From: Heteronotia binoei
Lineage: Eukaryota
NCBI RefSeq assembly: GCF_032191835.1
Contig: NC_083243.1
Location: 190,712,001-190,776,000 of the forward strand
Direction of reading: 5' to 3'
Length of the DNA stretch: 64,000 nucleotides
Shown piece by piece: positions 5,243 through 51,981 of the stretch. The position numbers and the translations under genes are program-made. Within the stretch, counting starts at the first letter, position 1. The number at the start of each line of letters is the position of its first letter. The notes beneath the pieces are model-generated. The model did not search any database, was not told the origin of the DNA, and saw only the letters and a list, made by a program, of their open reading frames with translations.

Positions 5243-5682
5243 GGACATATGGACATATGAAGACATCTGAAGCTGCCTTCTACTGAATCAGACCCTCGGT
5301 CCATCAAAGTCAGTATTGTCTACTCAGACTGGCAGCGGCTCTCCAGGGTCTCAAGCTGAGGTTTTTCACACCTATTTGCCTGGACCCTTTTTTGTGGACT
5401 TGCGGTGGCGGCCACAAGTATAGCCACCTTCAAGAAGGGTTTAGATAAAAATATGGAGCACAGGTCCATCAGTGGGTATTAGCCACAGTGTATGTGTGTA
5501 TATAAAATTTTTTGCCACTGTGTGACACAGAGTGTTGGACTTGATGGGCCGTTGGCCTGATCCAACATGGCTTCTCTTATGTTCTCTTCTCTTATGCTCT
5601 TTTTTGGAGATGCCAGGGATTGAACATGGGACCTTCTGCTTCCCAAGCAGATGCTCTACCACTGAGCCACCGTCCCTCTCCA
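5243..5682 (-). mobile_element. tRNA-derived SINE (family B, CR1-type 3' tail) split by a CR1 insertion
   Basis: The reverse strand head is ggtggctcagtggtagagcatctgcttgggaagcagaaggtcccatgttcaatccc (A and B boxes). The tail has 8-nt tandem repeats (atatgtcc). The two halves (5243-5393 and 5600-5682) rejoin at ggacccttttttggagatg. Confidence 0.85.
5394..5599 (+). mobile_element. 5'-truncated CR1 LINE 3' end
   Basis: Matches the 3' end of the long CR1 at 19764 (gccacaagtatagcc...ggcttctcttatgttc). Flanked by cttttttg at 5387-5394 and 5599-5606. Confidence 0.9.
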
Positions 5683-19763: not shown

Positions 19764-22555
19764 AAGAACATAAGAGAAGCCATGTTGGATTATATATATA
19801 CTGTGGCTAATAGCCACTGATGAACCTCTGCTTCATATTTTTATCCAATCCCCTTTTGAAGTTGGCTATGCTTGTAGCTGCCACCACCTCCTGTGGCAGT
19901 GAATTCCACATGTTAATCACCCTTTGGTTGAAGAAGTACTTCCTTTTATCCGTTTTAACCTGACTGCTCAGCAATTTCATTGAATGCCCACGAGTTCTTG
20001 TATTGTGAGAAAGGGAGAAAAGTACTTCTTTCTCTACTTTCTCCATCCCATGCATAATCTTGCAAACCTCTATCATGTCGCCCCGCAGTTGACGTTTCTC
20101 CAAGCTAAAGAGCCCCAAGTGTTTTAACCTTTCTTCATAGGGAAAGTGTTCCAAACCTTTAATCATTCTAGTTGCCCTTTTCTGCAAGTTTTCCAATGCT
20201 ATGATATCCTTTTTGAGATGCAGTGACCAGAATTGTACACAGTATTTCAAATGAGACCGCACCATCGATTTATACAGGGGCATTATGATACTGGCTGATT
20301 TGTTTTCAGTTCCCTTCCTAATAATTCCCAGCATGGCGTTGGCCCTTTTTTATTGCAATCGCACGCTGTCTTGACATTTTCAGTGAGTTATCTACCACGA
20401 CCCCAAGATCTCTTTCTTGGCCAGTCTCTGCCAGTTCACAACTCATCAACTTGTATTTGTAGCTGGGATTTTTGGCCCCAATGTGCATTACTTTGCACTT
20501 GGCCACATTGAACCTCATCTGCCATGTTGACGCCCACTCACCCAGCTTCAACAGATCCCTTTGGAGTGCCTCACAATCCTCTCTGCTTCTCACCACCCTG
20601 AACAATTTAGTGTCATCTGCAAACTTGGCCACTTCATTGCTTAATCCCAAATCCAAATCATTAATGAACAAGTTAGAGCATGGGACCCAGTACTGAGCCC
20701 TGCGGCACCCCACTGCTTACCGTCCTCCACTGTGAAGACTGCCCATTTATACTCACTCTCTGCTTCCTATTAATTAGCCAATTTTTGATCCACAAGAGGA
20801 CATGTCCTTTTACTCCATGACTCTCCAGCTTACTAAGGAGCCTTTGATGAGGAACTTTATCAAAAGCTTTCTGGAAGTCAAGGTAAACAACATATATCGA
20901 GTCCCCTTTGTCCATATGTTTGTTCAGCCCCTCAAAGAACGGTGACAGGTTAGTGAGGCAAGATCTTCCCTTATAGAACCTATGCTGAGTATTTCTCAAT
21001 GACCGTTTTCGCACACAGCTCACCTCGCAGTCACAATCCTGTTCCCTCCGCAGTGTCTGGTCGGATTTCCCACCATCTGCGCCGAAGTTACAGGAAGTGC
21101 TGCAGCTTTTGCATAGCAAAAAGTAAACCGCTAAAACCCAGTTTACGTTTGCTACGGAAAAGCCGCGGCACTTCCTGTAACTCCGGCGCAGATGGTGGGA
21201 AATCCAACAGACACTGCGGAGGGAATAGGATTGTGACTGCGAGGTAAGCTGTGTGCGAAAAAGGTTAATAACTTGTGTTCATCAATGTGCCTACTCATTC
21301 TGTCCTTGATAATGCTTTCAACCAACTTTCCCGGTATTGAAGTCAGACTGACTGGCCTGTAATTTCCCGGATCTCCTCTGGAACCCTTTTTAAAGATGGG
21401 GGTGACATTTGCTACCTTCCAGTCCTCAGGAACGGAGGCAGATTTCAATGAAACATTACATATTTTTGTCAAGAGATCCACAAGTTCAACTTTGAGTTCT
21501 TTCAGAACTCTTAGATGTATGCCATCCGGACCTGGTGACTTATTAGTTTTTAATTCGTCAATCAGTTGTAGGACCTCCTCTCTTGTTACCTCAATCTGAC
21601 TCAGGTCTTTCAACACCCCTTCCAAAATCAGCAGTTCTGGAGCGGGCAAACACTTCTCATCTTACACAGTGAAGTCTAAGGCAAAAAATGCATTCAGCTT
21701 CTCAGCCATTTCCCTAGCCTCCTTCAGTAATCCTTTTACCCCTTGGTCATCCAAGGGCCCCACTGCCTCCCTGGCTGGTTTCCTGCTTCTAATGTATCTG
21801 AAGAAATTTTTATTGTTGGTCTTTATGTTTTTTGCAATATGCTCCTCGTAGTCCCTTTTTGCCTGCCTGATCACAGTCTTGCATTTGATTTGCCACAGCC
21901 TGTGTTCCTTGTTATTAATCTCACTTGGATTGGTTTTCCACCGCTTAAAGGAGTCCTTCTTACCTTTTACAGCTTCCATTACTTTGTTTGTTAACCATGA
22001 AGGTCTTTTCTTATACCTGTTTATGCCTTTGCTAACTTGTGGTATATATTTTATCTGAGCTTCCAGGATTATAGTTTTAAATAGCCTCCAAGCTTCCCCA
22101 AGGGTTTTGACTGTATTTACCTTTCCTTTCAGTTTCCTTTTGACATGCCTCATCTCAGAGAATTTACCCCTTTTAAAGTTAAATGTGGTTGTGCTGGTCT
22201 TTTGGGGCAACTCCCTATTTATCCAAATGGTGAAATCAATAACGTTATGGTCACTGCTCCCAAGCGGTGTGATCACTTTTACATCTCTCACCAAGTCTTG
22301 GGTATTACTTAGGACCAAATCCAGGATCGCCCCACCCCTGGTAGGTTCTGTGACCATCTGCTCCATAGGACAGTCATTGAGAGCATTTAGAAACTCAATC
22401 TCTTTCTCTTGACCTGAACAAATATTGACCCAATCAATCTGTGGGTAATTAAAATCACCTATTACAACACAGTTTTTACGTTTGGCCACTATCTTTAATC
22501 CTTCCATCATATTATAATCGTCCTCTATCTTTTGATTTGGTGGGTGATAACAAAC
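19764..22555 (-). mobile_element. 5'-truncated CR1 LINE (ORF2: partial APE, RT, 3' UTR)
   Basis: Motifs VCYHPPNQ, GDFNYP, KSPGPDGIH, NYRPVSLTS, YLDFQKAFDKVPH, GVPQGSVLGP, FADDTKL and TRGHSMKL...WNSLP, followed by the CR1 3' tail. Several frameshifts. Flanked by ttt at 19761-19763 and 22556-22558. Confidence 0.96.
21001..21266. mobile_element. Palindromic MITE, 266 bp, 3-bp TSD (AAT)
   Basis: Long imperfect inverted arms (gaccgttttcgcacacagctcacctcgcag and ctgcgaggtaagctgtgtgcgaaaaaggtt). aat at 20998-21000 and 21267-21269. Removing the element and one TSD copy rejoins the CR1 sequence. Confidence 0.93.
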
Positions 22556-26096: not shown

Positions 26097-26725
26097 CAGG
26101 GTGGGTAACCTCTGTCCCGAGGGCCATATACGGCCCTCGAGGTCACTTGGTGTGGCCCTCGGGGATTGCTGGACCGAACTGAGCCATGTGGCAGCCTCTC
26201 TGGGGTCTGGCTGGCCAGCGAGGACTGTGGGGCCCAGCTGCACTGTGCAGCAACCTCCCCAAGGCCAGGCAGGGATCACAGGGCCCAGATGTACTCTGAG
26301 GCAGCCTCCCTGGGGCCTGGACAGTCGGCCAGAATTGCTGCAGGGCCTGGAAAAGTTACTGCCACAGTTCAGTTTGCACTTGATTATCCCAGAGGGTGTG
26401 GCCTAATATGCTAATGAGTGTGTGACCTAATATGCTAATATTAGGAGAAGTGGCCTAATATGCTGAGTTTCTGCTGGGCTTTTTCTACAAAAAAGCCCCG
26501 GACCTAGGCATTTGCCTAGGGCAACAGGCCGTGTGTGGATGTGCCAGATTAGGCTCTCCCCACATGACTTCAAATAGAAAAACAATTATTTGCATTAATT
26601 TTGCTGGCCTGAATCATTCTCCCTCGGCGGAACACTGTTTTTAAAGTTGATAATTTTTTATGGCCTGTGAATGATGTTATAAATATCCATATGGCCCTTG
26701 GCAGAAAAAAGGTTCCCCAGCCCTG
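26097..26725. mobile_element. hAT MITE (composite, about 630 bp)
   Basis: TIRs cagggtgggtaacct and aggttccccagccctg. Perfect 8-bp TSD ctgtaaat at 26089-26096 and 26726-26733. A sister copy is at 42688. Confidence 0.93.
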
Positions 26726-30119: not shown

Positions 30120-30592
30120 TAAGAACATAAAAGAAGCCATGTTGGATCAGGCCAATGGCTCATCAAGTCCAACACTCTGTGTCACATAGTGGTCAAAAAA
30201 ATTATACACACACACACACATATATACACTGTGGCTAATAGCCACTGATGGACCTCTGCTCCATATTTCTATCTAACCCCTTCTTGAAGCTGGCTATGCT
30301 TGTAGACGCCACCACCTCCTGTGGCAGTGAATTCCACATGTTCATCACCCTTTGGGTGAAGAAGTACTTCCTTTTATCCATTTTAACCCGACTGCTCAGC
30401 AATTTCATTGAATGCCCACAAGTTCTTGTATTGTGAGAAAGGGAGAAAAGGACTTCTTTCTCTGCTTTCTCCATCCCATGCATAATCTTGTAAACCTCTA
30501 TCATGTCACCCCGCAGTTGACGTTTCTCCAAGCTAAAGAGCCCCAAGCGTTTCAACCTTTCTTCATAGGGAAAGTGTTCCAACCCTTTAATC
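30120..30592 (-). mobile_element. 5'-truncated CR1 LINE
   Basis: IKGLEHFPYEERLKRLGLFSLEKRQLRGDMIEVYKIMHG...SISGY* plus the CR1 3' UTR; same family as 19764-22555. Confidence 0.95.
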
Positions 30593-37438: not shown

Positions 37439-37615
<177 letters not shown>

Positions 37616-42687: not shown

Positions 42688-43398
42688 CAGAGGTGGGGAA
42701 CCTCCATCTCTTGGTGTGGCCCTCGGGGATTGCTGGGCCGAACTGTGCCATGTGGCAGCCTCCTTGGGGCCTGGCTGGCCAGCAAGGATTGTGCAGCCCA
42801 GCCCGTGCTGTGCAGCAGCCTCCCCAGGGCCAGGCAGGGATCACAGGGCCCAAATGTACTGTGCGGCAGCCTCCCTGGGGCCTGGCTGGCCAGCCAGAAT
42901 TGCTGCAGGGCCTGAAAAAGTTACTGTCATAGTTCAGGTAAGTTTTCCCCTAATTTCTTTATTTCCCTTTCTTTCCATTTCTGCCTCCCATTTCTTTGTT
43001 CCCCTTTTGTTCCCATTTTTTTATTGATTGATTATCCCAGATAGTGTGGCCTAATATGCTAATGAGTGTGTGACCTAATATGTTAATATTAGGGGATGTG
43101 GTCTAATATGCTACTGAGTTCCCGCTGGGCTTTTTCTACAAAAAAGCTCTGGACCTATGCATTTGCCTAGGGCGGCAGTTCAGGCAGGCTGGGTGTGTGT
43201 GTGTGTGTGTGTGCGCCAGATTAGGCTCTCCCCACATGACTTCAAATAGAAAAAACAATTATTTGCATTAATTTTGCTGGCCTGAATCATTCTCCCTCGG
43301 CGGAACACCGTTTTTTAAGTTGATAATTTTGTATGGCCCGCGAATGATGTTAGAAATATCCATATGGCCCTTGGCAGAAAAAAGGTTCCCCAACCCTG
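42688..43398. mobile_element. hAT MITE (composite), sister of 26097-26725
   Basis: TIRs cagaggtggggaacct and aggttccccaaccctg. TSD atttaaat / attgaaat (7/8). Confidence 0.92.
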
Positions 43399-47367: not shown

Positions 47368-48000
47368 TGAGGGAACCATGAATGCCAACATGTACTGTGA
47401 TATACTGAAGCAGAGCATGATCCCCTCCCTTCGGAGACTGGGCCGCAGGGCAGTATTCCAACATGATAATGACCCCAAACACACCTCCAAAACGACCACT
47501 GCCTTGCTAAAGAAGCTGAGGGTAAAGGTGATGGATTGGCCAAGCATGTCTCCAGACCTAAACCCTATTGAACATCTGTAGGACATCCTGAAATGGAAGG
47601 TGGAGGTGCGCAAGGTCTCTAACATCCACCAGCTATGTGATGTCATCATGGAGGAGTGGAAGAGGACTCCAGTGGCAACCTGTGAAGCTCTGGTGAACTC
47701 TATGCCCAAGAGGGTTAAGGCAGTGCTGGAAAATAATGGTGACCACACAAAATATTGACACTTTGGGCCCCATTTGGACATTATCACTTAGGGGCGTACT
47801 CACTTTTGTTGCCAGCAGTTTAGACATTAATGGCTGTGTGCTGCGTAATTCTGAGGGGACAGCACACTACTGTTATACAAGCTGTAGACTCACTACTTTA
47901 CATTGTAGCCAAGTGTCATTTCTTCAGTGTTGTCACATGAAAAGATATTCTTAAATATTTACAAAATGTGAGGGGGTGTACTCACTTCTGTGACATACTG
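47368..48000 (+). mobile_element. Tc1 DNA transposon, 3' portion (DD34E transposase C-terminus plus right IR/DR terminus)
   Basis: [11 protein letters not shown]...[14 protein letters not shown]...MPKRVKAVLENNGDHTKY* (stop 47756-47758). Direct repeats ggggcgtactcactttt (47791) and ggggtgtactcacttct (47973). Ends ...catactg followed by TA. Confidence 0.95.
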
Positions 48001-49253
48001 TATATTGTAATATTTAGTTGCAGGTCACAAGGATATAACTTTATTTTTCAATCACCTACTGAGGGAGACTCCAATATTGGCTTTAATATCAATCTCCGGT
48101 CAGCTGTTTTCGACATTGCACAACTGCAAGCTTTCTCTGGTAGCACTGGACTGGCGAAAAAAGACTTTTTGCTTCATGCTTTAGCTACCTTGGAGACAGT
48201 TGCTAACCAATTGTATATTGACTTCGGAACATTTGTTGAGACATGATGATTATGTTATGTATGTGATATATTGATTGGCTGATATAGCTTGATTATGAAC
48301 TATTTATGAGCAATATATAATTTAGATTTTGATTACTATAAGAGTTTTGGGATTGTGTACTTGCAGCGGTTTTTCTAAAAGGATGGGAACCAGGCAAATA
48401 GCATAGCATTCCCCCTCCTCCAGATCTCCAGGGAAACTCCCAGGGAACTTTTCCCATGACATATAAAGACAATTAGACTAGGAAGTCCAGAAGGCTCACT
48501 GGGATTGTACTATAAGTATTTTGAAGATGAACTTTTACAACCATTAGAGATTACAATGAATATTTTACAAGTAGGAAGGATGCTGGAATTTTGGAAAGAG
48601 GCTAATATAACACTAATATCAAAAGAGAGGCAAGATCTTAATTTGACAAAAAATTATAGACCGATATTGCTGAATAACGATTACATGCTATTTACAATTT
48701 TTTTTAGCAGAAAGTTTGCTAACAATTCTGAAAGTATTTATCCATGGAGATCAATGTGGTTTCTTACCTAAAATACAGTTAAAGCATAATGTTAGAATGG
48801 TCTTGGATGTTTTGGGTTATCTTGAGAATTTGAGTATCTAGAATAATTTGAACTGGGCTTTTTTGATAAACATTTTAGAACGGACTTTGGAGATAATTTT
48901 ATAAAATAAGTGAAGTCAATTTATACTATACAGATGACTTGAATAATAGTAAATGCCCATTGTCACCTCTTTTGTTTATTTTAGCCCTTGGAATTTGAAT
49001 AGAGATATTAGACACAATGAGAGGATTGAAGATGTGAAGGTTTAAAAAGAGACTTATACATTAAGAGCTTTTGTAGATGATTCAGTACTAGCTTTAGAAA
49101 ACCCCTTAAAGGGGACAGAAGTATTAAGGCATAAACTGAAAGAATTTGGTGCACTAGCAGAATTTAAAATAAATAAACAGAAAAAAAAGATCATTAGGGT
49201 TTGTAGAGTCTTTCGGGATCAAGTGCCGTGTTCTACTGGAGAAAGTTTTCCTT

Positions 49254-49294
49254 CCAGACGTTTCGTTCTCAGCTGCGGAGAACATCCTCAGTGG
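49254..49294 (-). ncRNA. Mirror copy of the hammerhead ribozyme motif, sense to the ADCY5 pre-mRNA
   Basis: Exact reverse complement of 49399-49439. Confidence 0.85.
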
Positions 49295-49398
49295 CGTTGC
49301 AGCCGGAGCAGGCGCTCTGACCTTCTTGGCTGCTGTGCATTGATCCCACTCAATGCACAGCAGCCAAGAAGGTCTGAGCGCCTGCTCCGGCTGCAACG

Positions 49399-49439
49399 CC
49401 ACTGAGGATGTTCTCCGCAGCTGAGAACGAAACGTCTGG
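49399..49439 (+). ncRNA. Minimal type I hammerhead ribozyme motif
   Basis: CCA-CUGAGGA-u-GUUCUC(cgcagcu)GAGAAC-GAAA-C-GUC-UGG. It has the CUGANGA and GAAA cores, a 6-bp stem II, a CCA/UGG stem I, a palindromic ACGU stem III and a GUC cleavage triplet (49434-49436). Confidence 0.85.
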
Positions 49440-50713
49440 AAGGAAAACTTTCTCCAGTAGAACACGGCACTTGATCCCGAAAGACTCTACAAACCCTAAT
49501 GATGTTACCAGCCGTGAAAACCTGAAATCTTTGAGAAAACAAAGATGTTAATCAAAAATATTAAATTACAAGAACAAACAATTTATGAATAAAACTGATT
49601 TTTAAGCTTGAAAAGAAAATTAGATATTTGGGCACTACATTGACAAATACGAACTGTATGTTGTTTCAAAATAATTAGGTTAAGACCTGGAATGAAGTTA
49701 AAAAGATTTGGGATAAATTGCAATTGTTGTTGTGAAGGATTTCTGTGATCAAAATGAAAGTTTTACCTAAAATGTTGTTCCTTTTTCAGATAATTGTTGT
49801 TTTTGAGAAATGGAAGATTACTAGAATTGAAGGGTCAGTATTTGAGATTTGGGTGGCATGGCTGTTTGTGGTATGAAAAAACTAAGATCAGTGTGGCTTT
49901 TAAAAATAATTAAATTAGACATGCAATTTTGAGGATATGGAACAAGTATAAATCTAAAAAAAGGTAAAGGTAAGCACCAAGTTATTACCAACCCTTGGGG
50001 TGATGTCACATCATAATGTTTTCTTGGCACACTTCATATGGGCTGGTTTGCCATTGCCTTAAGACTTTTTTATAGACAAGAAATGTAATTTAAATTTAAT
50101 TGGTTATTATGATTTAATAGATTTTGCTCAAGGAAAATGTAAAATGAAGCCAAGAGAAGACTTGATAAGAGCATATGATTTGTTTTTCTATGCACAATTA
50201 TTGGAAAGATTTAAAATGGATACATGATGGTATGGCATTGAAGAAACGTGGACTGTATTTGAAACTGAACTATGTACAAACGCAACAAGACCAGGCTGCC
50301 CATTGTCACCTATTTTGTTTATTGCTAAAATGTATAAACTTTTATGGAAATATGAAATAGAGGAAGAACAAGTGAAAAATTGTATGTTACAATGGGCTAT
50401 GAATTTTGGAACAATGGGAAAGATTTCAATTAAAGGGTTTGAAATTTATATCATTACCTTAAGGAGAATGTTTATAAAAAAGATGTTTTGTTGGTATATT
50501 TCTCCAGATAAATTGGCTAAAACGTATAAAAATATTTCAAAAAGTCCTCTCCCTAGAAGACTGCTGCTGTGAATCTGTGTAAGCAATAGAGGACTAGGTG
50601 GGCCAATTGTTTAATTCATTAATGGCAGCTTCAAGAGAAAAGAAGTTACAATCTTTGTTTCATTAAACAGAGAACTCACATGCACACATGTAAACACAAC
50701 TTCACAGGAATAC

Positions 50714-50875
50714 CTCTGGAAAGTTGCAGCTAGGCTTGGAGCTATCACAGAACCCTTGCGTTCCCAAGCTGTAATTGGTGGCAGAATAGCTGATATGGCA
50801 CATATTCACCTGATGAGGGGTGATGTTGTACTTTGCAGCCACACAGTTGAGAAGGTCCACAGTGCTGCATGTGAA
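50714..50875 (-). CDS. ADCY5: ADCY5 exon 14 (extracellular loop)
   Basis: gtcag acceptor and gtatt donor. FTCSTVDLLNCVAAKYNITPHQVNMCHISYSATNYSLGTQGFCDSSKPSCNFPE. 162 nt, phase 0-0. Confidence 0.95.
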
Positions 50876-51981
50876 CTGACAAAAACGTAAGAGACTATCA
50901 TGAAACAAAGGCAACGAGAAGGGGAAAGTAAGCTTTAACAAGAGTCCTCATCGAGCACTTCAGAGAGGAGGTGTACTAAGAAGTACTTCTTCACACCAGG
51001 AAACTTCCCCAGCCAGAACACTCTTAGGCCTAATTATACAAAACACAAATTCATATAAATAGAGGTCATAACAGAGACTGATCAGTAAGCATGCGCTTTG
51101 ATTTGCTTCACAAAACACCAACTGTTTCTTCTCCCCACCAAAGTGCCATCTAGATTAGTTTATTTCATTCATGCACCATCAAATTGGCAGGAAGTGTCAG
51201 ATTCAGGACAGCTTTCCTAATATGTCTAAGTGCACCAATCAGGATAGGCTTAGTCTTCTAGCTTGCAGAATTCTGTTGATCAAACAACAAATGGAGGTAT
51301 TTGATACTTAAGACATTTCGTAGATACAAAATTGGACAATCTTCTTGGCAATCTTAAATCATTCATGTAGGCTGGCTAGACAGAAAGTAAAAAGACCGTG
51401 ACTTGAAACTAACCTAGCATGAGCTGAGCTGTCTTAAAAAAAAAAAAAAAGAATTTATTGTAAAGACAAAGTACTTCAGAATGATAAATGAAAACAAAGA
51501 ATACCAATGTTATTCCCTGTGCCCTACAAAATAATCCCTATAGCATCTACAATTAAATTCTTATTCAATAAATAATATTTTCATAGTAAATTTGAAAAAA
51601 AAAACCCTAAATGGTTCAATATTTTCCTGAAATCTTGTATTCCAATAATCTATCAATAAAATCAATTTAATCAAACTTGTCAGCGGATTAATTTGACTGA
51701 ACTTTAAAATGTGTCAATTAAGACACACAAACAGTTGACCAAACTCTCTTAACCTCTCTATCAGAGAAGGAGGATCTGATTTTTGCTTCGAGAAAGGGAT
51801 ACACCTTTCAGCAGTAGATTAAAAAAAAATTCACCACATTCTCAATCAGAGGTTTCCACATCTTTCAAGATTTTCCAAGCAGGATCCTCTTTGAGATTAA
51901 CAATCTGCTTTCTTTTATATTATATTCCACAGTGTCGTATATATCATAGTTCAACTAAGCCAAAAGGACAGTATGACATAC

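What the first reader, a model, noticed from the sequence alone, without database searches (positions are those of the whole stretch)
49190..49534. Near-perfect 314-bp palindrome carrying a hammerhead ribozyme on both strands inside an ADCY5 intron
Seen in the sequence: 154-bp inverted arms with one mismatch around a 6-nt loop (tcccac), a 31-nt tail, and an 11/12 TSD, inserted into an old L1. Each arm has a complete minimal hammerhead: CUGAGGA core, 6-bp stem II, GAAA, palindromic ACGU, GUC triplet and CCA/UGG stem I. Established knowledge: Penelope-like elements carry minimal type I hammerheads in their pLTRs, often form inverted pLTR pairs, and such minimal ribozymes are thought to need dimerisation. 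Inference: because the element is palindromic, the ADCY5 pre-mRNA (intron between exons 14 and 15) contains a self-cleaving motif. It is probably locked in a hairpin of about 150 bp, which could also be an ADAR/Dicer substrate or form a DNA cruciform. This may be a young, non-coding, ribozyme-bearing mobile unit (retrozyme-like).
Basis: partly seen in the sequence, partly recalled or inferred. Interest (0 to 1): 0.85.

Follow-up and report, generated by a model that had tools for sequence, protein, structure and literature searches.

The report
Inverted Penelope fragment with hammerhead motifs
This is an ordinary dead insertion of a lizard Penelope-like retrotransposon: two truncated copies of the element's end joined head to head inside an ADCY5 intron, each carrying the minimal hammerhead motif these elements are known to have, and nothing suggests it acts on the host gene.

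Summary
Two 154-bp arms (49190-49343, 49350-49503) differ at one position and enclose a 6-nt loop. A 31-nt extension follows on one side only, and an 11-bp A-rich target duplication (10/11) flanks the insert. Each arm has a complete minimal type I hammerhead motif.

The host gene is ADCY5 on the minus strand, and the insert is intronic. It interrupts a decayed reverse-transcriptase sequence, and the frame continues once the insert is removed.

This anatomy is the published signature of Penelope-like elements (PLEs): head-to-head 5'-truncated copies, a 30-40-bp tail on one end, and a hammerhead overlapping the ORF start. It aligns with Poseidon_Ac of Anolis carolinensis: same ATG position, same cut site, same tail boundary, and compensatory changes in stems I and II.

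RNA reads come from many other family copies. They run on past the arms' inner ends and diverge at 49534, so this copy is truncated and is not a mobile unit.

In a transcript through the locus the hammerhead is locked in the hairpin (about +82 kcal/mol to free it). No read evidence shows cleavage or editing.

Earlier unchecked notes of this scan report similar inverted hammerhead-bearing Penelope inserts elsewhere in this genome. Verdict: a known kind, of low interest.

The parts
49179..49189 (.). Left copy of the target-site duplication (AGAAAAAAAAG)
   Evidence: Matches 49534-49544 at 10 of 11 positions and lies in the same codon phase of the interrupted RT-like frame. A-rich, so weak on its own.
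49190..49343 (-). Left arm: a 5'-truncated PLE terminal segment, sense on the minus strand, ending at the tail-less terminus (...CCCTAATGAT)
   Evidence: 154 bp, reverse complement of 49350-49503 with one mismatch at 49318. At that position it keeps the base that most family reads carry.
49257..49291 (-). Minimal type I hammerhead motif on the minus strand, the copy that lies in the ADCY5 pre-mRNA; predicted cut after C49257
   Evidence: Exact motif match and descriptor hit with a 1-nt bulge, 6-bp stem II, 4-nt palindromic helix III and 3-bp stem I. ADCY5 is on the minus strand.
49344..49349 (.). Central 6-nt loop TCCCAC at the head-to-head junction
   Evidence: Family RNA reads match from 49345 or 49347 rightwards, so 3-5 of the 6 nt are element sequence continuing the right arm (table 7).
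49350..49503 (+). Right arm: a 5'-truncated PLE terminal segment, sense on the plus strand (52 nt upstream of the hammerhead core, the hammerhead, and the first 32 codons of the element's ORF)
   Evidence: Aligns with the Poseidon_Ac unit junction: local score 42 against a shuffle mean of 15.8 and a maximum of 29 in 2000 shuffles.
49399..49439 (+). Minimal hammerhead on the plus strand: stem I CCA/UGG, core CUGAGGA, bulged U, stem II GUUCUC/GAGAAC with a 7-nt loop, GAAA, ACGU palindrome, cut after C49436
   Evidence: Against the Poseidon_Ac hammerhead all 9 pairs are kept, 4 of them by changes on both sides.
49408..49533 (+). Start of the element's ORF: the ATG begins at core position A9 and 42 codons stay open to the end of the tail
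   Evidence: the ORF listing entry 49408-49551. ATG position and cut site (26 nt after the ATG) are the same as described for PAc. No significant amino-acid similarity to PAc.
49504..49534 (+). 31-nt 'tail' extension, present on this side only
   Evidence: Absent from the left arm. 113 and 366 RNA reads from other copies diverge into unrelated sequence right after 49534, which marks it as the family's 3' end. It corresponds to the PAc tail at about nt 85-119 of the ORF.
49534..49544 (.). Right copy of the target-site duplication (AGAAAACAAAG); the first A is shared with the end of the tail
49046..49189 (+). Interrupted host sequence: a decayed reverse-transcriptase frame of an older non-LTR element, continuing after 49545
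   Evidence: RVT_1, E = 0.053, profile positions 149-189. The frame continues across the insert as ...KINKQKKK / KTKMLIKN....
50708..50878 (-). ADCY5 exon immediately upstream (in the gene's direction) of the insert
   Evidence: Matches adenylate cyclase type 5, PDB 8sl3_A residues 853-910, E = 1.2e-16.
37442..37615 (-). Next ADCY5 exon downstream of the insert (approximate limits)
   Evidence: Translation [25 protein letters not shown]...LLVTANA found by motif search. Further exons lie at about 27.0, 16.3, 15.1, 12.8 and 10.1 kb.

Best explanation
The feature is one dead-on-arrival insertion of a Penelope-like retrotransposon (PLE) of the Poseidon/Penelope type, from a family related to but distinct from Poseidon_Ac.

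It consists only of the element's 3'-terminal (pseudo-LTR) region, present twice, head to head. One copy ends at the inner reverse-transcription start site and has no tail. The other ends at the outer start site and has the 31-nt tail.

It landed in an A-rich site of an older retroelement inside an ADCY5 intron and made an 11-bp target duplication.

The hammerhead motif is there because in these elements the minimal hammerhead overlaps the start of the ORF within the terminal repeat. It is cargo of the fragment, not a function of the locus.

Inferred formation: the cDNA was primed at the target and stopped about 58 nt upstream of the ATG. Its end then folded back and was copied (self-priming), and the intermediate was resolved at a tail boundary. 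I rate this route about 0.55 against about 0.3 for two separate priming events.

Inferred consequence for the host: in the ADCY5 pre-mRNA the two arms zip into a 154-bp hairpin that sequesters the single sense hammerhead, so the insert is most likely neutral.
For: Anatomy:
- 154-bp arms with one mismatch, a 6-nt loop, a one-sided 31-nt tail and a 10/11 TSD.

Agreement with published descriptions of PLE insertions:
- High 5' truncation, an adjacent inverted 5'-truncated copy, and a 30-40-bp tail often at one end only (PMC8557442).
- A 31-bp tail on one of the inverted pLTRs, a 9-10-bp TSD, a pLTR that includes the first codons of the ORF, and palindromes at the inverted junction read as self-priming (PMC3846280).
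- Minimal hammerheads in PLE repeats, with long helix II, a bulged nucleotide before 10.1, a G10.1-C11.1 pair, palindromic 15.2-16.2 and short helix I; pairs on opposite strands 100-700 bp apart (PMC4209133).

Homology to Poseidon_Ac (sequence from PMC11167929 File S1):
- Same CUGAGGA-U core, with the ATG at A9.
- Cut site 26 nt after the ATG.
- The arm ends at ...CCCTnnTGAT, which is the tail boundary.
- Alignment score 42 against a shuffle maximum of 29. The part downstream of the hammerhead alone scores 30, against a shuffle maximum of 29, reached by 0 of 2000 shuffles.
- All 9 stem pairs are kept, 4 by double changes; slid controls pair at 33-44%.

Family evidence from RNA reads:
- Reads cover only the element, not the flanks.
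- They carry near-fixed differences that are mirrored in both arms (49208/49485 and 49218/49475).
- They continue 5' past 49343 and 49347.
- They diverge after 49534.

Host context:
- ADCY5 exons lie on both sides of the insert.
- The genome is described as a lizard in earlier, unchecked notes of this scan, and squamates are known PLE hosts.
Against: - No PLE-type RT or GIY-YIG ORF was found in the window (motif scan). The autonomous partner of this exact family was not seen.
- The first 42 codons show no significant amino-acid similarity to PAc. The link to an autonomous PLE therefore rests on about 59% nucleotide identity over 142 columns plus shared architecture.
- Rfam hammerhead models do not score the motif.
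- No DNA run holding this locus was available, so the fold-back is not confirmed by independent reads.
- The formation route is inferred from one junction.
Confidence: 0.88

Rival explanations
1. The insert acts on ADCY5. Either its hammerhead cuts the pre-mRNA in the intron, or its 154-bp hairpin is edited by ADAR or diced into small RNAs, changing ADCY5 output or feeding silencing of the PLE family.
For: A sense hammerhead motif with an intact core lies on the gene's strand at 49291-49257. The hairpin is extremely stable. The family is transcribed in the sampled animals.
Against: - Freeing the hammerhead fold costs about +82 kcal/mol, and the stem II pairing probability in context is ~0.
- There is only one sense copy per transcript, while min-HHRs need a dimer.
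- PAc's hammerhead is inactive without its protein, and no reads end at its cut site in vivo.
- In one search no read starts pile up at 49437 and there are no joints.
- A>G changes (11-12 places) are matched by G>A (7-12) and C>T (7-9), which is what paralogue variation looks like.
- The flanks have zero coverage, so this locus was not observed as RNA at all.
Confidence: 0.05
2. It is a complete, young, non-autonomous mobile unit (retrozyme-like, or a SINE-like derivative of a PLE) rather than a truncated fragment.
For: Short length, near-identical arms and a transcribed family with many copies. A recent preprint derives animal non-LTR retrozymes from PLE pLTRs.
Against: - Family reads continue 5' of both inner arm ends with a consistent sequence (agreement 0.69-0.84, table 7), so the unit is longer than the arm.
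- Retrozymes are direct tandem repeats with a hammerhead in each unit. Here the two motifs are on opposite strands and there are no direct repeats.
- No circular-junction reads were seen (table 5).
Confidence: 0.04
3. The fold-back is an assembly artefact. Only one arm exists in the real genome, and the assembler or a chimeric long read mirrored it.
For: PLE tandem and inverted structures are known to trouble assemblies. No run holds the words that span the centre; only 1 of 5 sampled words was found, probably a family word.
Against: - The mirror stops exactly at the element's ends, with different unique flanks on each side.
- The two flanks form a TSD and one continuous RT-like frame.
- The arms differ at one base and by the tail, which a mirrored read would not produce.
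- Such head-to-head pairs are the usual PLE structure.
- The absence of holders is uninformative, because no genomic run of this animal covers even the flanks.
Confidence: 0.03
4. Same element, different route. The two arms come from two separate target-primed reverse transcriptions, one from each nicked strand of the target, which met in the middle. There was no self-priming.
For: [quoted passage not shown] This explains directly why one arm ends at the tail-less site and the other at the tailed site.
Against: - Two independent cDNAs would have to stop within about 3-5 nt of each other. The loop is 6 nt, of which 3-5 are element sequence.
- Both arms share the same private variants against the expressed family (49208/49485, 49218/49475). 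That fits one template molecule or one arm copied from the other.
- Palindromic junctions in PLEs have been read as self-priming.
Confidence: 0.3

Closest known systems
Poseidon_Ac (PAc), Penelope-like element of Anolis carolinensis (Arkhipova 2006; Frangieh et al. 2024, PMC11167929)
   Same: - The hammerhead core CUGAGGA is followed by a bulged U, a 6-bp stem II with a 7-nt loop, and GAAACGUC.
- The ATG of the ORF begins at core position A9, and the cut site is 26 nt after the ATG.
- A conserved block (CCCGAAAGAC...ACAA..CCCT..TGAT) leads to the tail boundary.
- The tail is about 31-34 nt long.
- Insertion is into AT-rich DNA.
   Different: - It is a different family. Nucleotide identity is about 59% over the junction region.
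- Stem I and stem II sequences differ through compensatory changes.
- The sequence upstream of the core is unrelated, and the first 42 codons show no detectable amino-acid similarity.
- The arm ends 96 nt and the tail about 126 nt into the ORF, against about 85-90 and 119 in PAc.
- This copy has no RT/EN body.
Inverted-pLTR insertions of Penelope elements, e.g. Pen2a_Av of Adineta vaga (PMC3846280) and the general PLE scheme in Craig et al. 2021 (PMC8557442)
   Same: Head-to-head inverted terminal repeats, a 31-bp tail on one of them only, a 9-10-bp TSD, terminal repeats that include the first codons of the ORF, and a palindrome at the inverted junction.
   Different: Those examples usually keep an ORF between a direct and an inverted pLTR. 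Here truncation is so deep that only the two terminal pieces remain, giving an almost perfect 314-bp palindrome.
Minimal hammerheads (min-HHR) of metazoan PLEs (Cervera and De la Pena 2014, PMC4209133)
   Same: [quoted passage not shown] That paper also reports occurrence on opposite strands a few hundred bp apart.
   Different: Nothing essential. Helix I here is only 3 bp, against the typical 4-5 bp. Activity was not tested here, and published min-HHRs cleave poorly and only as dimers or with protein.
Animal non-LTR retrozymes (PMC7229834; bioRxiv 10.64898/2026.07.22.740005)
   Same: Type I hammerhead, evolutionary link to PLE terminal repeats, and occurrence in non-avian, non-mammalian vertebrates.
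   Different: Retrozymes are direct tandem repeats that yield circular RNAs after two cuts. This locus has one sense motif per strand, no direct repeat and no circular junction reads.

Membership tests
Penelope-like element (EN+ PLE) insertion | Hammerhead motif inside the terminal (pseudo-LTR) repeat | tested here: met
   The exact motif is present in both arms. Stems are kept against the Poseidon_Ac hammerhead, with 4 double changes.
Penelope-like element (EN+ PLE) insertion | 30-40-bp 'tail' extension present at one end only | tested here: met
   The 31 nt at 49504-49534 are absent from the left arm. Family reads diverge after 49534. The position matches the PAc tail.
Penelope-like element (EN+ PLE) insertion | 5' truncation with an adjacent inverted copy (head-to-head) and a palindromic junction | tested here: met
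   Arms are 154 bp with a 6-nt loop. Family reads run on 5' of both inner ends.
Penelope-like element (EN+ PLE) insertion | Short target-site duplication in AT-rich DNA | tested here: met
   11 bp, 10/11 identical, in phase with the interrupted RT-like frame. The sequence is low-complexity, so support is moderate.
Penelope-like element (EN+ PLE) insertion | Sequence link to an element encoding a PLE reverse transcriptase and GIY-YIG endonuclease | tested here: inconclusive
   Nucleotide homology to the Poseidon_Ac unit junction is significant. There is no amino-acid similarity over the 42 codons, and no PLE RT/GIY-YIG motifs were found in the window. The genome itself could not be searched.
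Hammerhead ribozyme, canonical (Rfam Hammerhead_1 / Hammerhead_3 and relatives) | Score at or above the family's covariance-model threshold, with three helices in one molecule | tested here: not met
   No hammerhead family is listed even at E <= 10, either on 1.7 kb or on the 76-nt arm core. Helix III has no loop; only ACGU is present.
Minimal hammerhead (min-HHR) of metazoan PLEs | Conserved core C3-A9, G12-A14, A15.1-U16.1 and H17; helix II of 4 bp or more; palindromic 15.2-16.2 | tested here: met
   Descriptor scan: 2 hits, both in the arms, against 0.1 per shuffled window.
Minimal hammerhead (min-HHR) of metazoan PLEs | Self-cleavage (as a dimer or with element protein) | not testable with these tools
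   Read data show no pile-up of starts at 49437. The literature reports weak or protein-dependent activity.
Non-LTR retrozyme | Two or more hammerheads in direct orientation bounding a repeat unit; circular RNA | tested here: not met
   One sense motif per strand, no direct repeats and no circular joints.
microRNA precursor | Score above an Rfam family's gathering threshold | tested here: not met
   All mir-family hits are generic long-hairpin matches far below gathering scores, for example MIR820 at 81.7 against 196.
Foldback / MITE DNA transposon | Symmetric terminal inverted repeats at both ends, with a family that ends at the TIR tips | tested here: not met
   The ends are asymmetric because of the one-sided tail. 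The arms are retroelement sequence whose family continues beyond the inner ends.

The most novel reading that the evidence does not exclude
The 154-bp perfect hairpin, transcribed as part of the ADCY5 pre-mRNA, might be diced into small RNAs that silence the still-expressed Penelope family in trans. That would make it an accidental host-side trap. Alternatively, the junction could serve as a clean natural record that PLE inverted pairs arise by fold-back self-priming followed by resolution at the tail boundary.
Probability: 0.05. Interest if true: 0.45.

Novelty: already known. Interest (0 to 1): 0.15.

Why it matters
It matters little as a discovery. Minimal hammerheads in Penelope-like elements, their head-to-head truncated insertions and the one-sided tail have been described since 2005-2014, and a lizard element of this type was dissected biochemically in 2024.

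The locus is still a tidy textbook example. Its ends coincide with the two reverse-transcription start sites mapped in vitro for PAc. Its nearly symmetric junction, with 3-5 of the 6 loop bases being element sequence, bears on the open question of how PLEs make inverted copies. A genome-wide census of such junctions would be the useful follow-up.

For annotation, such palindromes should be masked as PLE fragments. They should not be called microRNA precursors or functional ribozymes.

Tried and rejected
- Rfam search at E <= 10 on 1.7 kb and on the 76-nt core: no hammerhead hit, only sub-threshold microRNA-like matches to the long hairpin. Rfam at gathering threshold on the whole window: only a tRNA.
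- BLASTP of the 42 codons against the PAc N-terminus: no alignment.
- Pfam on the 47-aa ORF of the arm and on the 88-aa flank ORF: nothing.
- Fuzzy search for PLE RT and GIY-YIG motifs in six frames of the window: no credible hit.
- Dimer folding of two arm cores with ViennaRNA gave a domain-swapped stem II duplex, not the hammerhead dimer. Thermodynamic folding cannot model the core, so I set this aside.
- Search for runs holding the centre of the palindrome: no holder of the junction words, so the fold-back is neither confirmed nor refuted.
- No genomic run of the animal covers the flanks, so presence/absence polymorphism could not be tested.
- The search of earlier findings by place (near) and by sequence: blank.
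- The roughly threefold step in RNA depth at about 49436 was considered as a trace of cleavage and rejected. After adding the mirrored left-arm reads the step is about 1.7-fold, reads with the tail can only be laid on the right arm, and no read starts pile up at 49437.
- A-to-I editing: A>G places are not in excess over G>A and C>T, and the reads come from paralogues.
Full report

Yes. The repeat finder reports one inverted pair, 49187-49343 against 49350-49506, 99% complementary and 6 nt apart. Checked base by base, the solid arms are 49190-49343 and 49350-49503. Each is 154 bp, and the single mismatch is 49318 against 49375. The loop is TCCCAC at 49344-49349.

The stretch folds as RNA into one uninterrupted hairpin of -328 kcal/mol (z = -42.6). 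As DNA it folds at -215 kcal/mol.

To the right of the right arm lie 31 nt (49504-49534) that have no counterpart on the left.

The flanks carry AGAAAAAAAAG (49179-49189) and AGAAAACAAAG (49534-49544), which match at 10 of 11 positions. This is A-rich and weak alone. However, both copies sit in the same codon phase of a decayed reverse-transcriptase frame that reads on across the insert...FVDD...EFKINKQKKK on the left and KTKMLIKN... on the right. The left piece gives a weak RVT_1 match (E = 0.053). So the insert was placed precisely into an older retroelement. 'L1' specifically was not shown.

**2. The hammerhead motif**

The 35-nt string from CTGAGGA to GAAACGTC occurs exactly twice, at 49402-49436 (+) and 49291-49257 (-). 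None is expected in shuffles.

A descriptor written after the published min-HHR finds only these two sites in the 64-kb window, against 0.1 per shuffled window. The descriptor asks for the core, an optional bulge, helix II of at least 4 bp, GAAA, a palindromic helix III and an H at position 17. Each site has a 1-nt bulge, a 6-bp helix II, the 4-nt palindrome ACGU and a 3-bp helix I.

Rfam's hammerhead models do not score it at all. That is expected for a motif with no helix III loop. The Rfam hits that do appear are microRNA families matching any long hairpin, and all are far below their thresholds.

**3. Host context**

Translations on the minus strand match adenylate cyclase type 5 (PDB 8sl3_A):
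- Residues 797-854 at about 52.0 kb (E = 4.6e-11).
- Residues 853-910 at 50708-50878 (E = 1.2e-16).
- Residues 1123-1180 at 15.0-15.2 kb (E = 1.1e-32).

Further exons lie at about 63.1, 37.5, 27.0, 16.3, 12.8 and 10.1 kb. The insert therefore lies in an ADCY5 intron, about 1.2 kb downstream of the exon at 50.7-50.9 kb, and the pre-mRNA is the minus strand. I could not verify the exon numbers 14/15.

Earlier, unchecked notes of this scan call this genome a lizard. They also list several similar inverted, hammerhead-bearing Penelope inserts on other pieces of it.

**4. What it is**

The anatomy is the published signature of Penelope-like elements (PLEs):
- Craig et al. 2021 describe insertions with a high degree of 5' truncation, often an inverted 5'-truncated copy next to it, and a 30-40-bp tail often present at only one end (PMC8557442).
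- Arkhipova et al. 2013 describe a 31-bp tail on one of two inverted pLTRs, 9-10-bp TSDs, pLTRs that include the first codons of the ORF, and palindromes at the inverted junction, which they read as self-priming (PMC3846280).
- Cervera and De la Pena 2014 describe the minimal hammerhead of metazoan PLEs with the traits seen here, and note pairs on opposite strands 100-700 bp apart (PMC4209133).

The nearest characterised relative is Poseidon_Ac (PAc) of Anolis carolinensis. I took its consensus from File S1 of PMC11167929. Joined end to start, PAc reads CUGAGGA-U, a 6-bp stem, a 7-nt loop, the stem's return strand, then GAAACGUC. The ORF's ATG begins at core position A9, and the cut site is 26 nt after the ATG. 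The arm here has the same layout, with the ATG at 49408 and the cut after 49436.

The two sequences align through a conserved block up to ...CCCTnnTGAT, which is exactly where the left arm ends and the tail begins. PAc's tail is given as about nt 85-119 of its ORF. Here the tail spans about nt 97-127.

Alignment statistics:
- The local score is 42, against a shuffle mean of 15.8 and a maximum of 29 in 2000 shuffles.
- The part downstream of the hammerhead alone scores 30, against a shuffle maximum of 29, reached by 0 of 2000 shuffles.

Across the two hammerheads all 9 stem pairs are kept. Four are kept through changes on both sides, while slid controls pair at only 33-44%. With only two sequences this is modest evidence, but it is what a conserved RNA fold predicts.

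The first 42 codons are open but show no detectable amino-acid similarity to PAc. The conservation is therefore at the RNA/DNA level.

**5. Evidence from reads**

Raw RNA reads of two runs labelled with the same species as the best holders, plus RNA contigs of a third run, cover only 49187-49538. The flanks have zero depth. The reads come from other copies of the family:
- Most carry A at 49208 mirrored by T at 49485, and C at 49218 mirrored by G at 49475.
- At 49375 about 90% carry A, the base the left arm implies. So the single arm mismatch is a change in the right arm.

Reads run on past both inner arm ends with one consistent sequence (agreement 0.69-0.84). They match the reference from 49345 or 49347 rightwards. 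It follows that the family is longer than the arm, that both arms are truncated at almost the same point, and that 3-5 of the 6 loop bases are element sequence.

After 49534, 113 and 366 reads diverge into many different sequences (agreement 0.45-0.59). This marks 49534 as the family's usual 3' end, shared by many insertions.

A second species' contigs hold the tail region too. Words of the arms occur in runs of several species labels.

**6. How it most likely arose (inference)**

PAc protein nicks AT-rich DNA and starts reverse transcription at two adjacent internal sites whose spacing equals the tail. Here the right-hand copy starts at the outer site and the left-hand copy at the inner one.

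Three observations point to fold-back copying:
- The two copies stop within a few bases of each other.
- The loop is mostly element sequence.
- Both arms share private variants.

I therefore favour one cDNA whose end folded back and was copied, with the intermediate resolved at a tail boundary. Arkhipova 2013 and Craig 2021 proposed this route. I rate it about 0.55. Two independent primings from the two nicked strands, which PAc can perform in vitro, remain possible at about 0.3.

**7. What it does now (inference)**

Either strand's transcript contains one antisense arm followed by one sense arm. The hammerhead-bearing arm is therefore made after its complement is already available.

In the minus-strand context, forcing the hammerhead's stems and freeing its core costs +82 kcal/mol relative to the hairpin. 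The pairing probability of stem II is ~0.

A min-HHR also needs a second copy to build helix III. PAc's motif cleaves only with its protein, is not needed for insertion, and leaves no cut ends in Anolis RNA-seq.

In one search I saw no pile-up of read starts at 49437, no joints and no excess of A>G over G>A or C>T. A roughly threefold depth step near 49436 shrinks to about 1.7-fold once the mirrored arm is counted, and it fits a gradient of 5' truncation. The locus itself was not seen as RNA, so effects on ADCY5, editing or dicing are untested and in my view unlikely.

**8. Rivals**

- A retrozyme-like complete unit is contradicted by the reads that continue 5' and by the lack of direct repeats.
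- An assembly artefact is unlikely, because the mirror stops at the element's ends, the arms differ by one base and by the tail, and the flanks form a TSD within one reading frame. No independent DNA reads could be found, however.
- A foldback DNA transposon and a microRNA gene fail their defining tests.

**9. Verdict**

The 'mobile ribozyme unit' and any effect on ADCY5 are not supported.

This is an ordinary, fairly young, dead PLE fragment of a kind already described. Its youth is suggested by one difference in 154 paired bases and by near-identical transcribed relatives. According to unchecked notes, the scan has already seen the same kind elsewhere in this genome.

Interest is low. Its small value is as a clean example whose ends match the reverse-transcription start sites mapped in vitro.

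Noticed in passing
window 47378-47581 (+): Fragment of a Tc1/mariner-type transposase (Pfam DDE_3, E = 1.1e-07) about 1.6 kb from the insert, in the same intron.
   Followed up: partly
window ~19800-22510 (-): Non-LTR retrotransposon remnant with an Exo_endo_phos_2 endonuclease (E = 1.3e-10) and a weak RVT_1 hit, in the intron between the exons at 16.3 and 27.0 kb.
   Followed up: partly
window 5605-5677 (-): tRNA-Pro(GGG)-like sequence, found by Rfam (47.3 bits) and by ARAGORN, downstream of the last ADCY5 exon. It may be a tRNA gene or a tRNA-derived SINE head.
   Followed up: no
window 49992-50029: A short stretch about 500 bp from the insert is covered by RNA reads with sharp, highly consistent loose ends on both sides (agreement 0.99-1.0) and a near-fixed difference at 50015. 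It is probably part of another transcribed repeat or of a transcript from elsewhere.
   Followed up: no
window 49505 (reads of run X21): Fourteen RNA reads join the tail to a different upstream sequence (ACATTAGGGTTTATAACCCAGAATAA, agreement 0.94) that begins like the reverse complement of the arm's end. This may be another family copy with a tail-side inverted junction (table 7).
   Followed up: no
window 26583-26600 and 43256-43273 (+); 20121-20138 and 30549-30566 (-): Two pairs of near-identical translated stretches show further dispersed repeat families within the ADCY5 introns.
   Followed up: no
window 10064-63190 (-): Nine ADCY5 exons, covering transmembrane domain 2 through the C2 catalytic domain, can be placed at about 63.1, 52.0, 50.8, 37.5, 27.0, 16.3, 15.1, 12.8 and 10.1 kb. 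Counting back from the terminal exon, the insert sits six exons from the end.
   Followed up: partly
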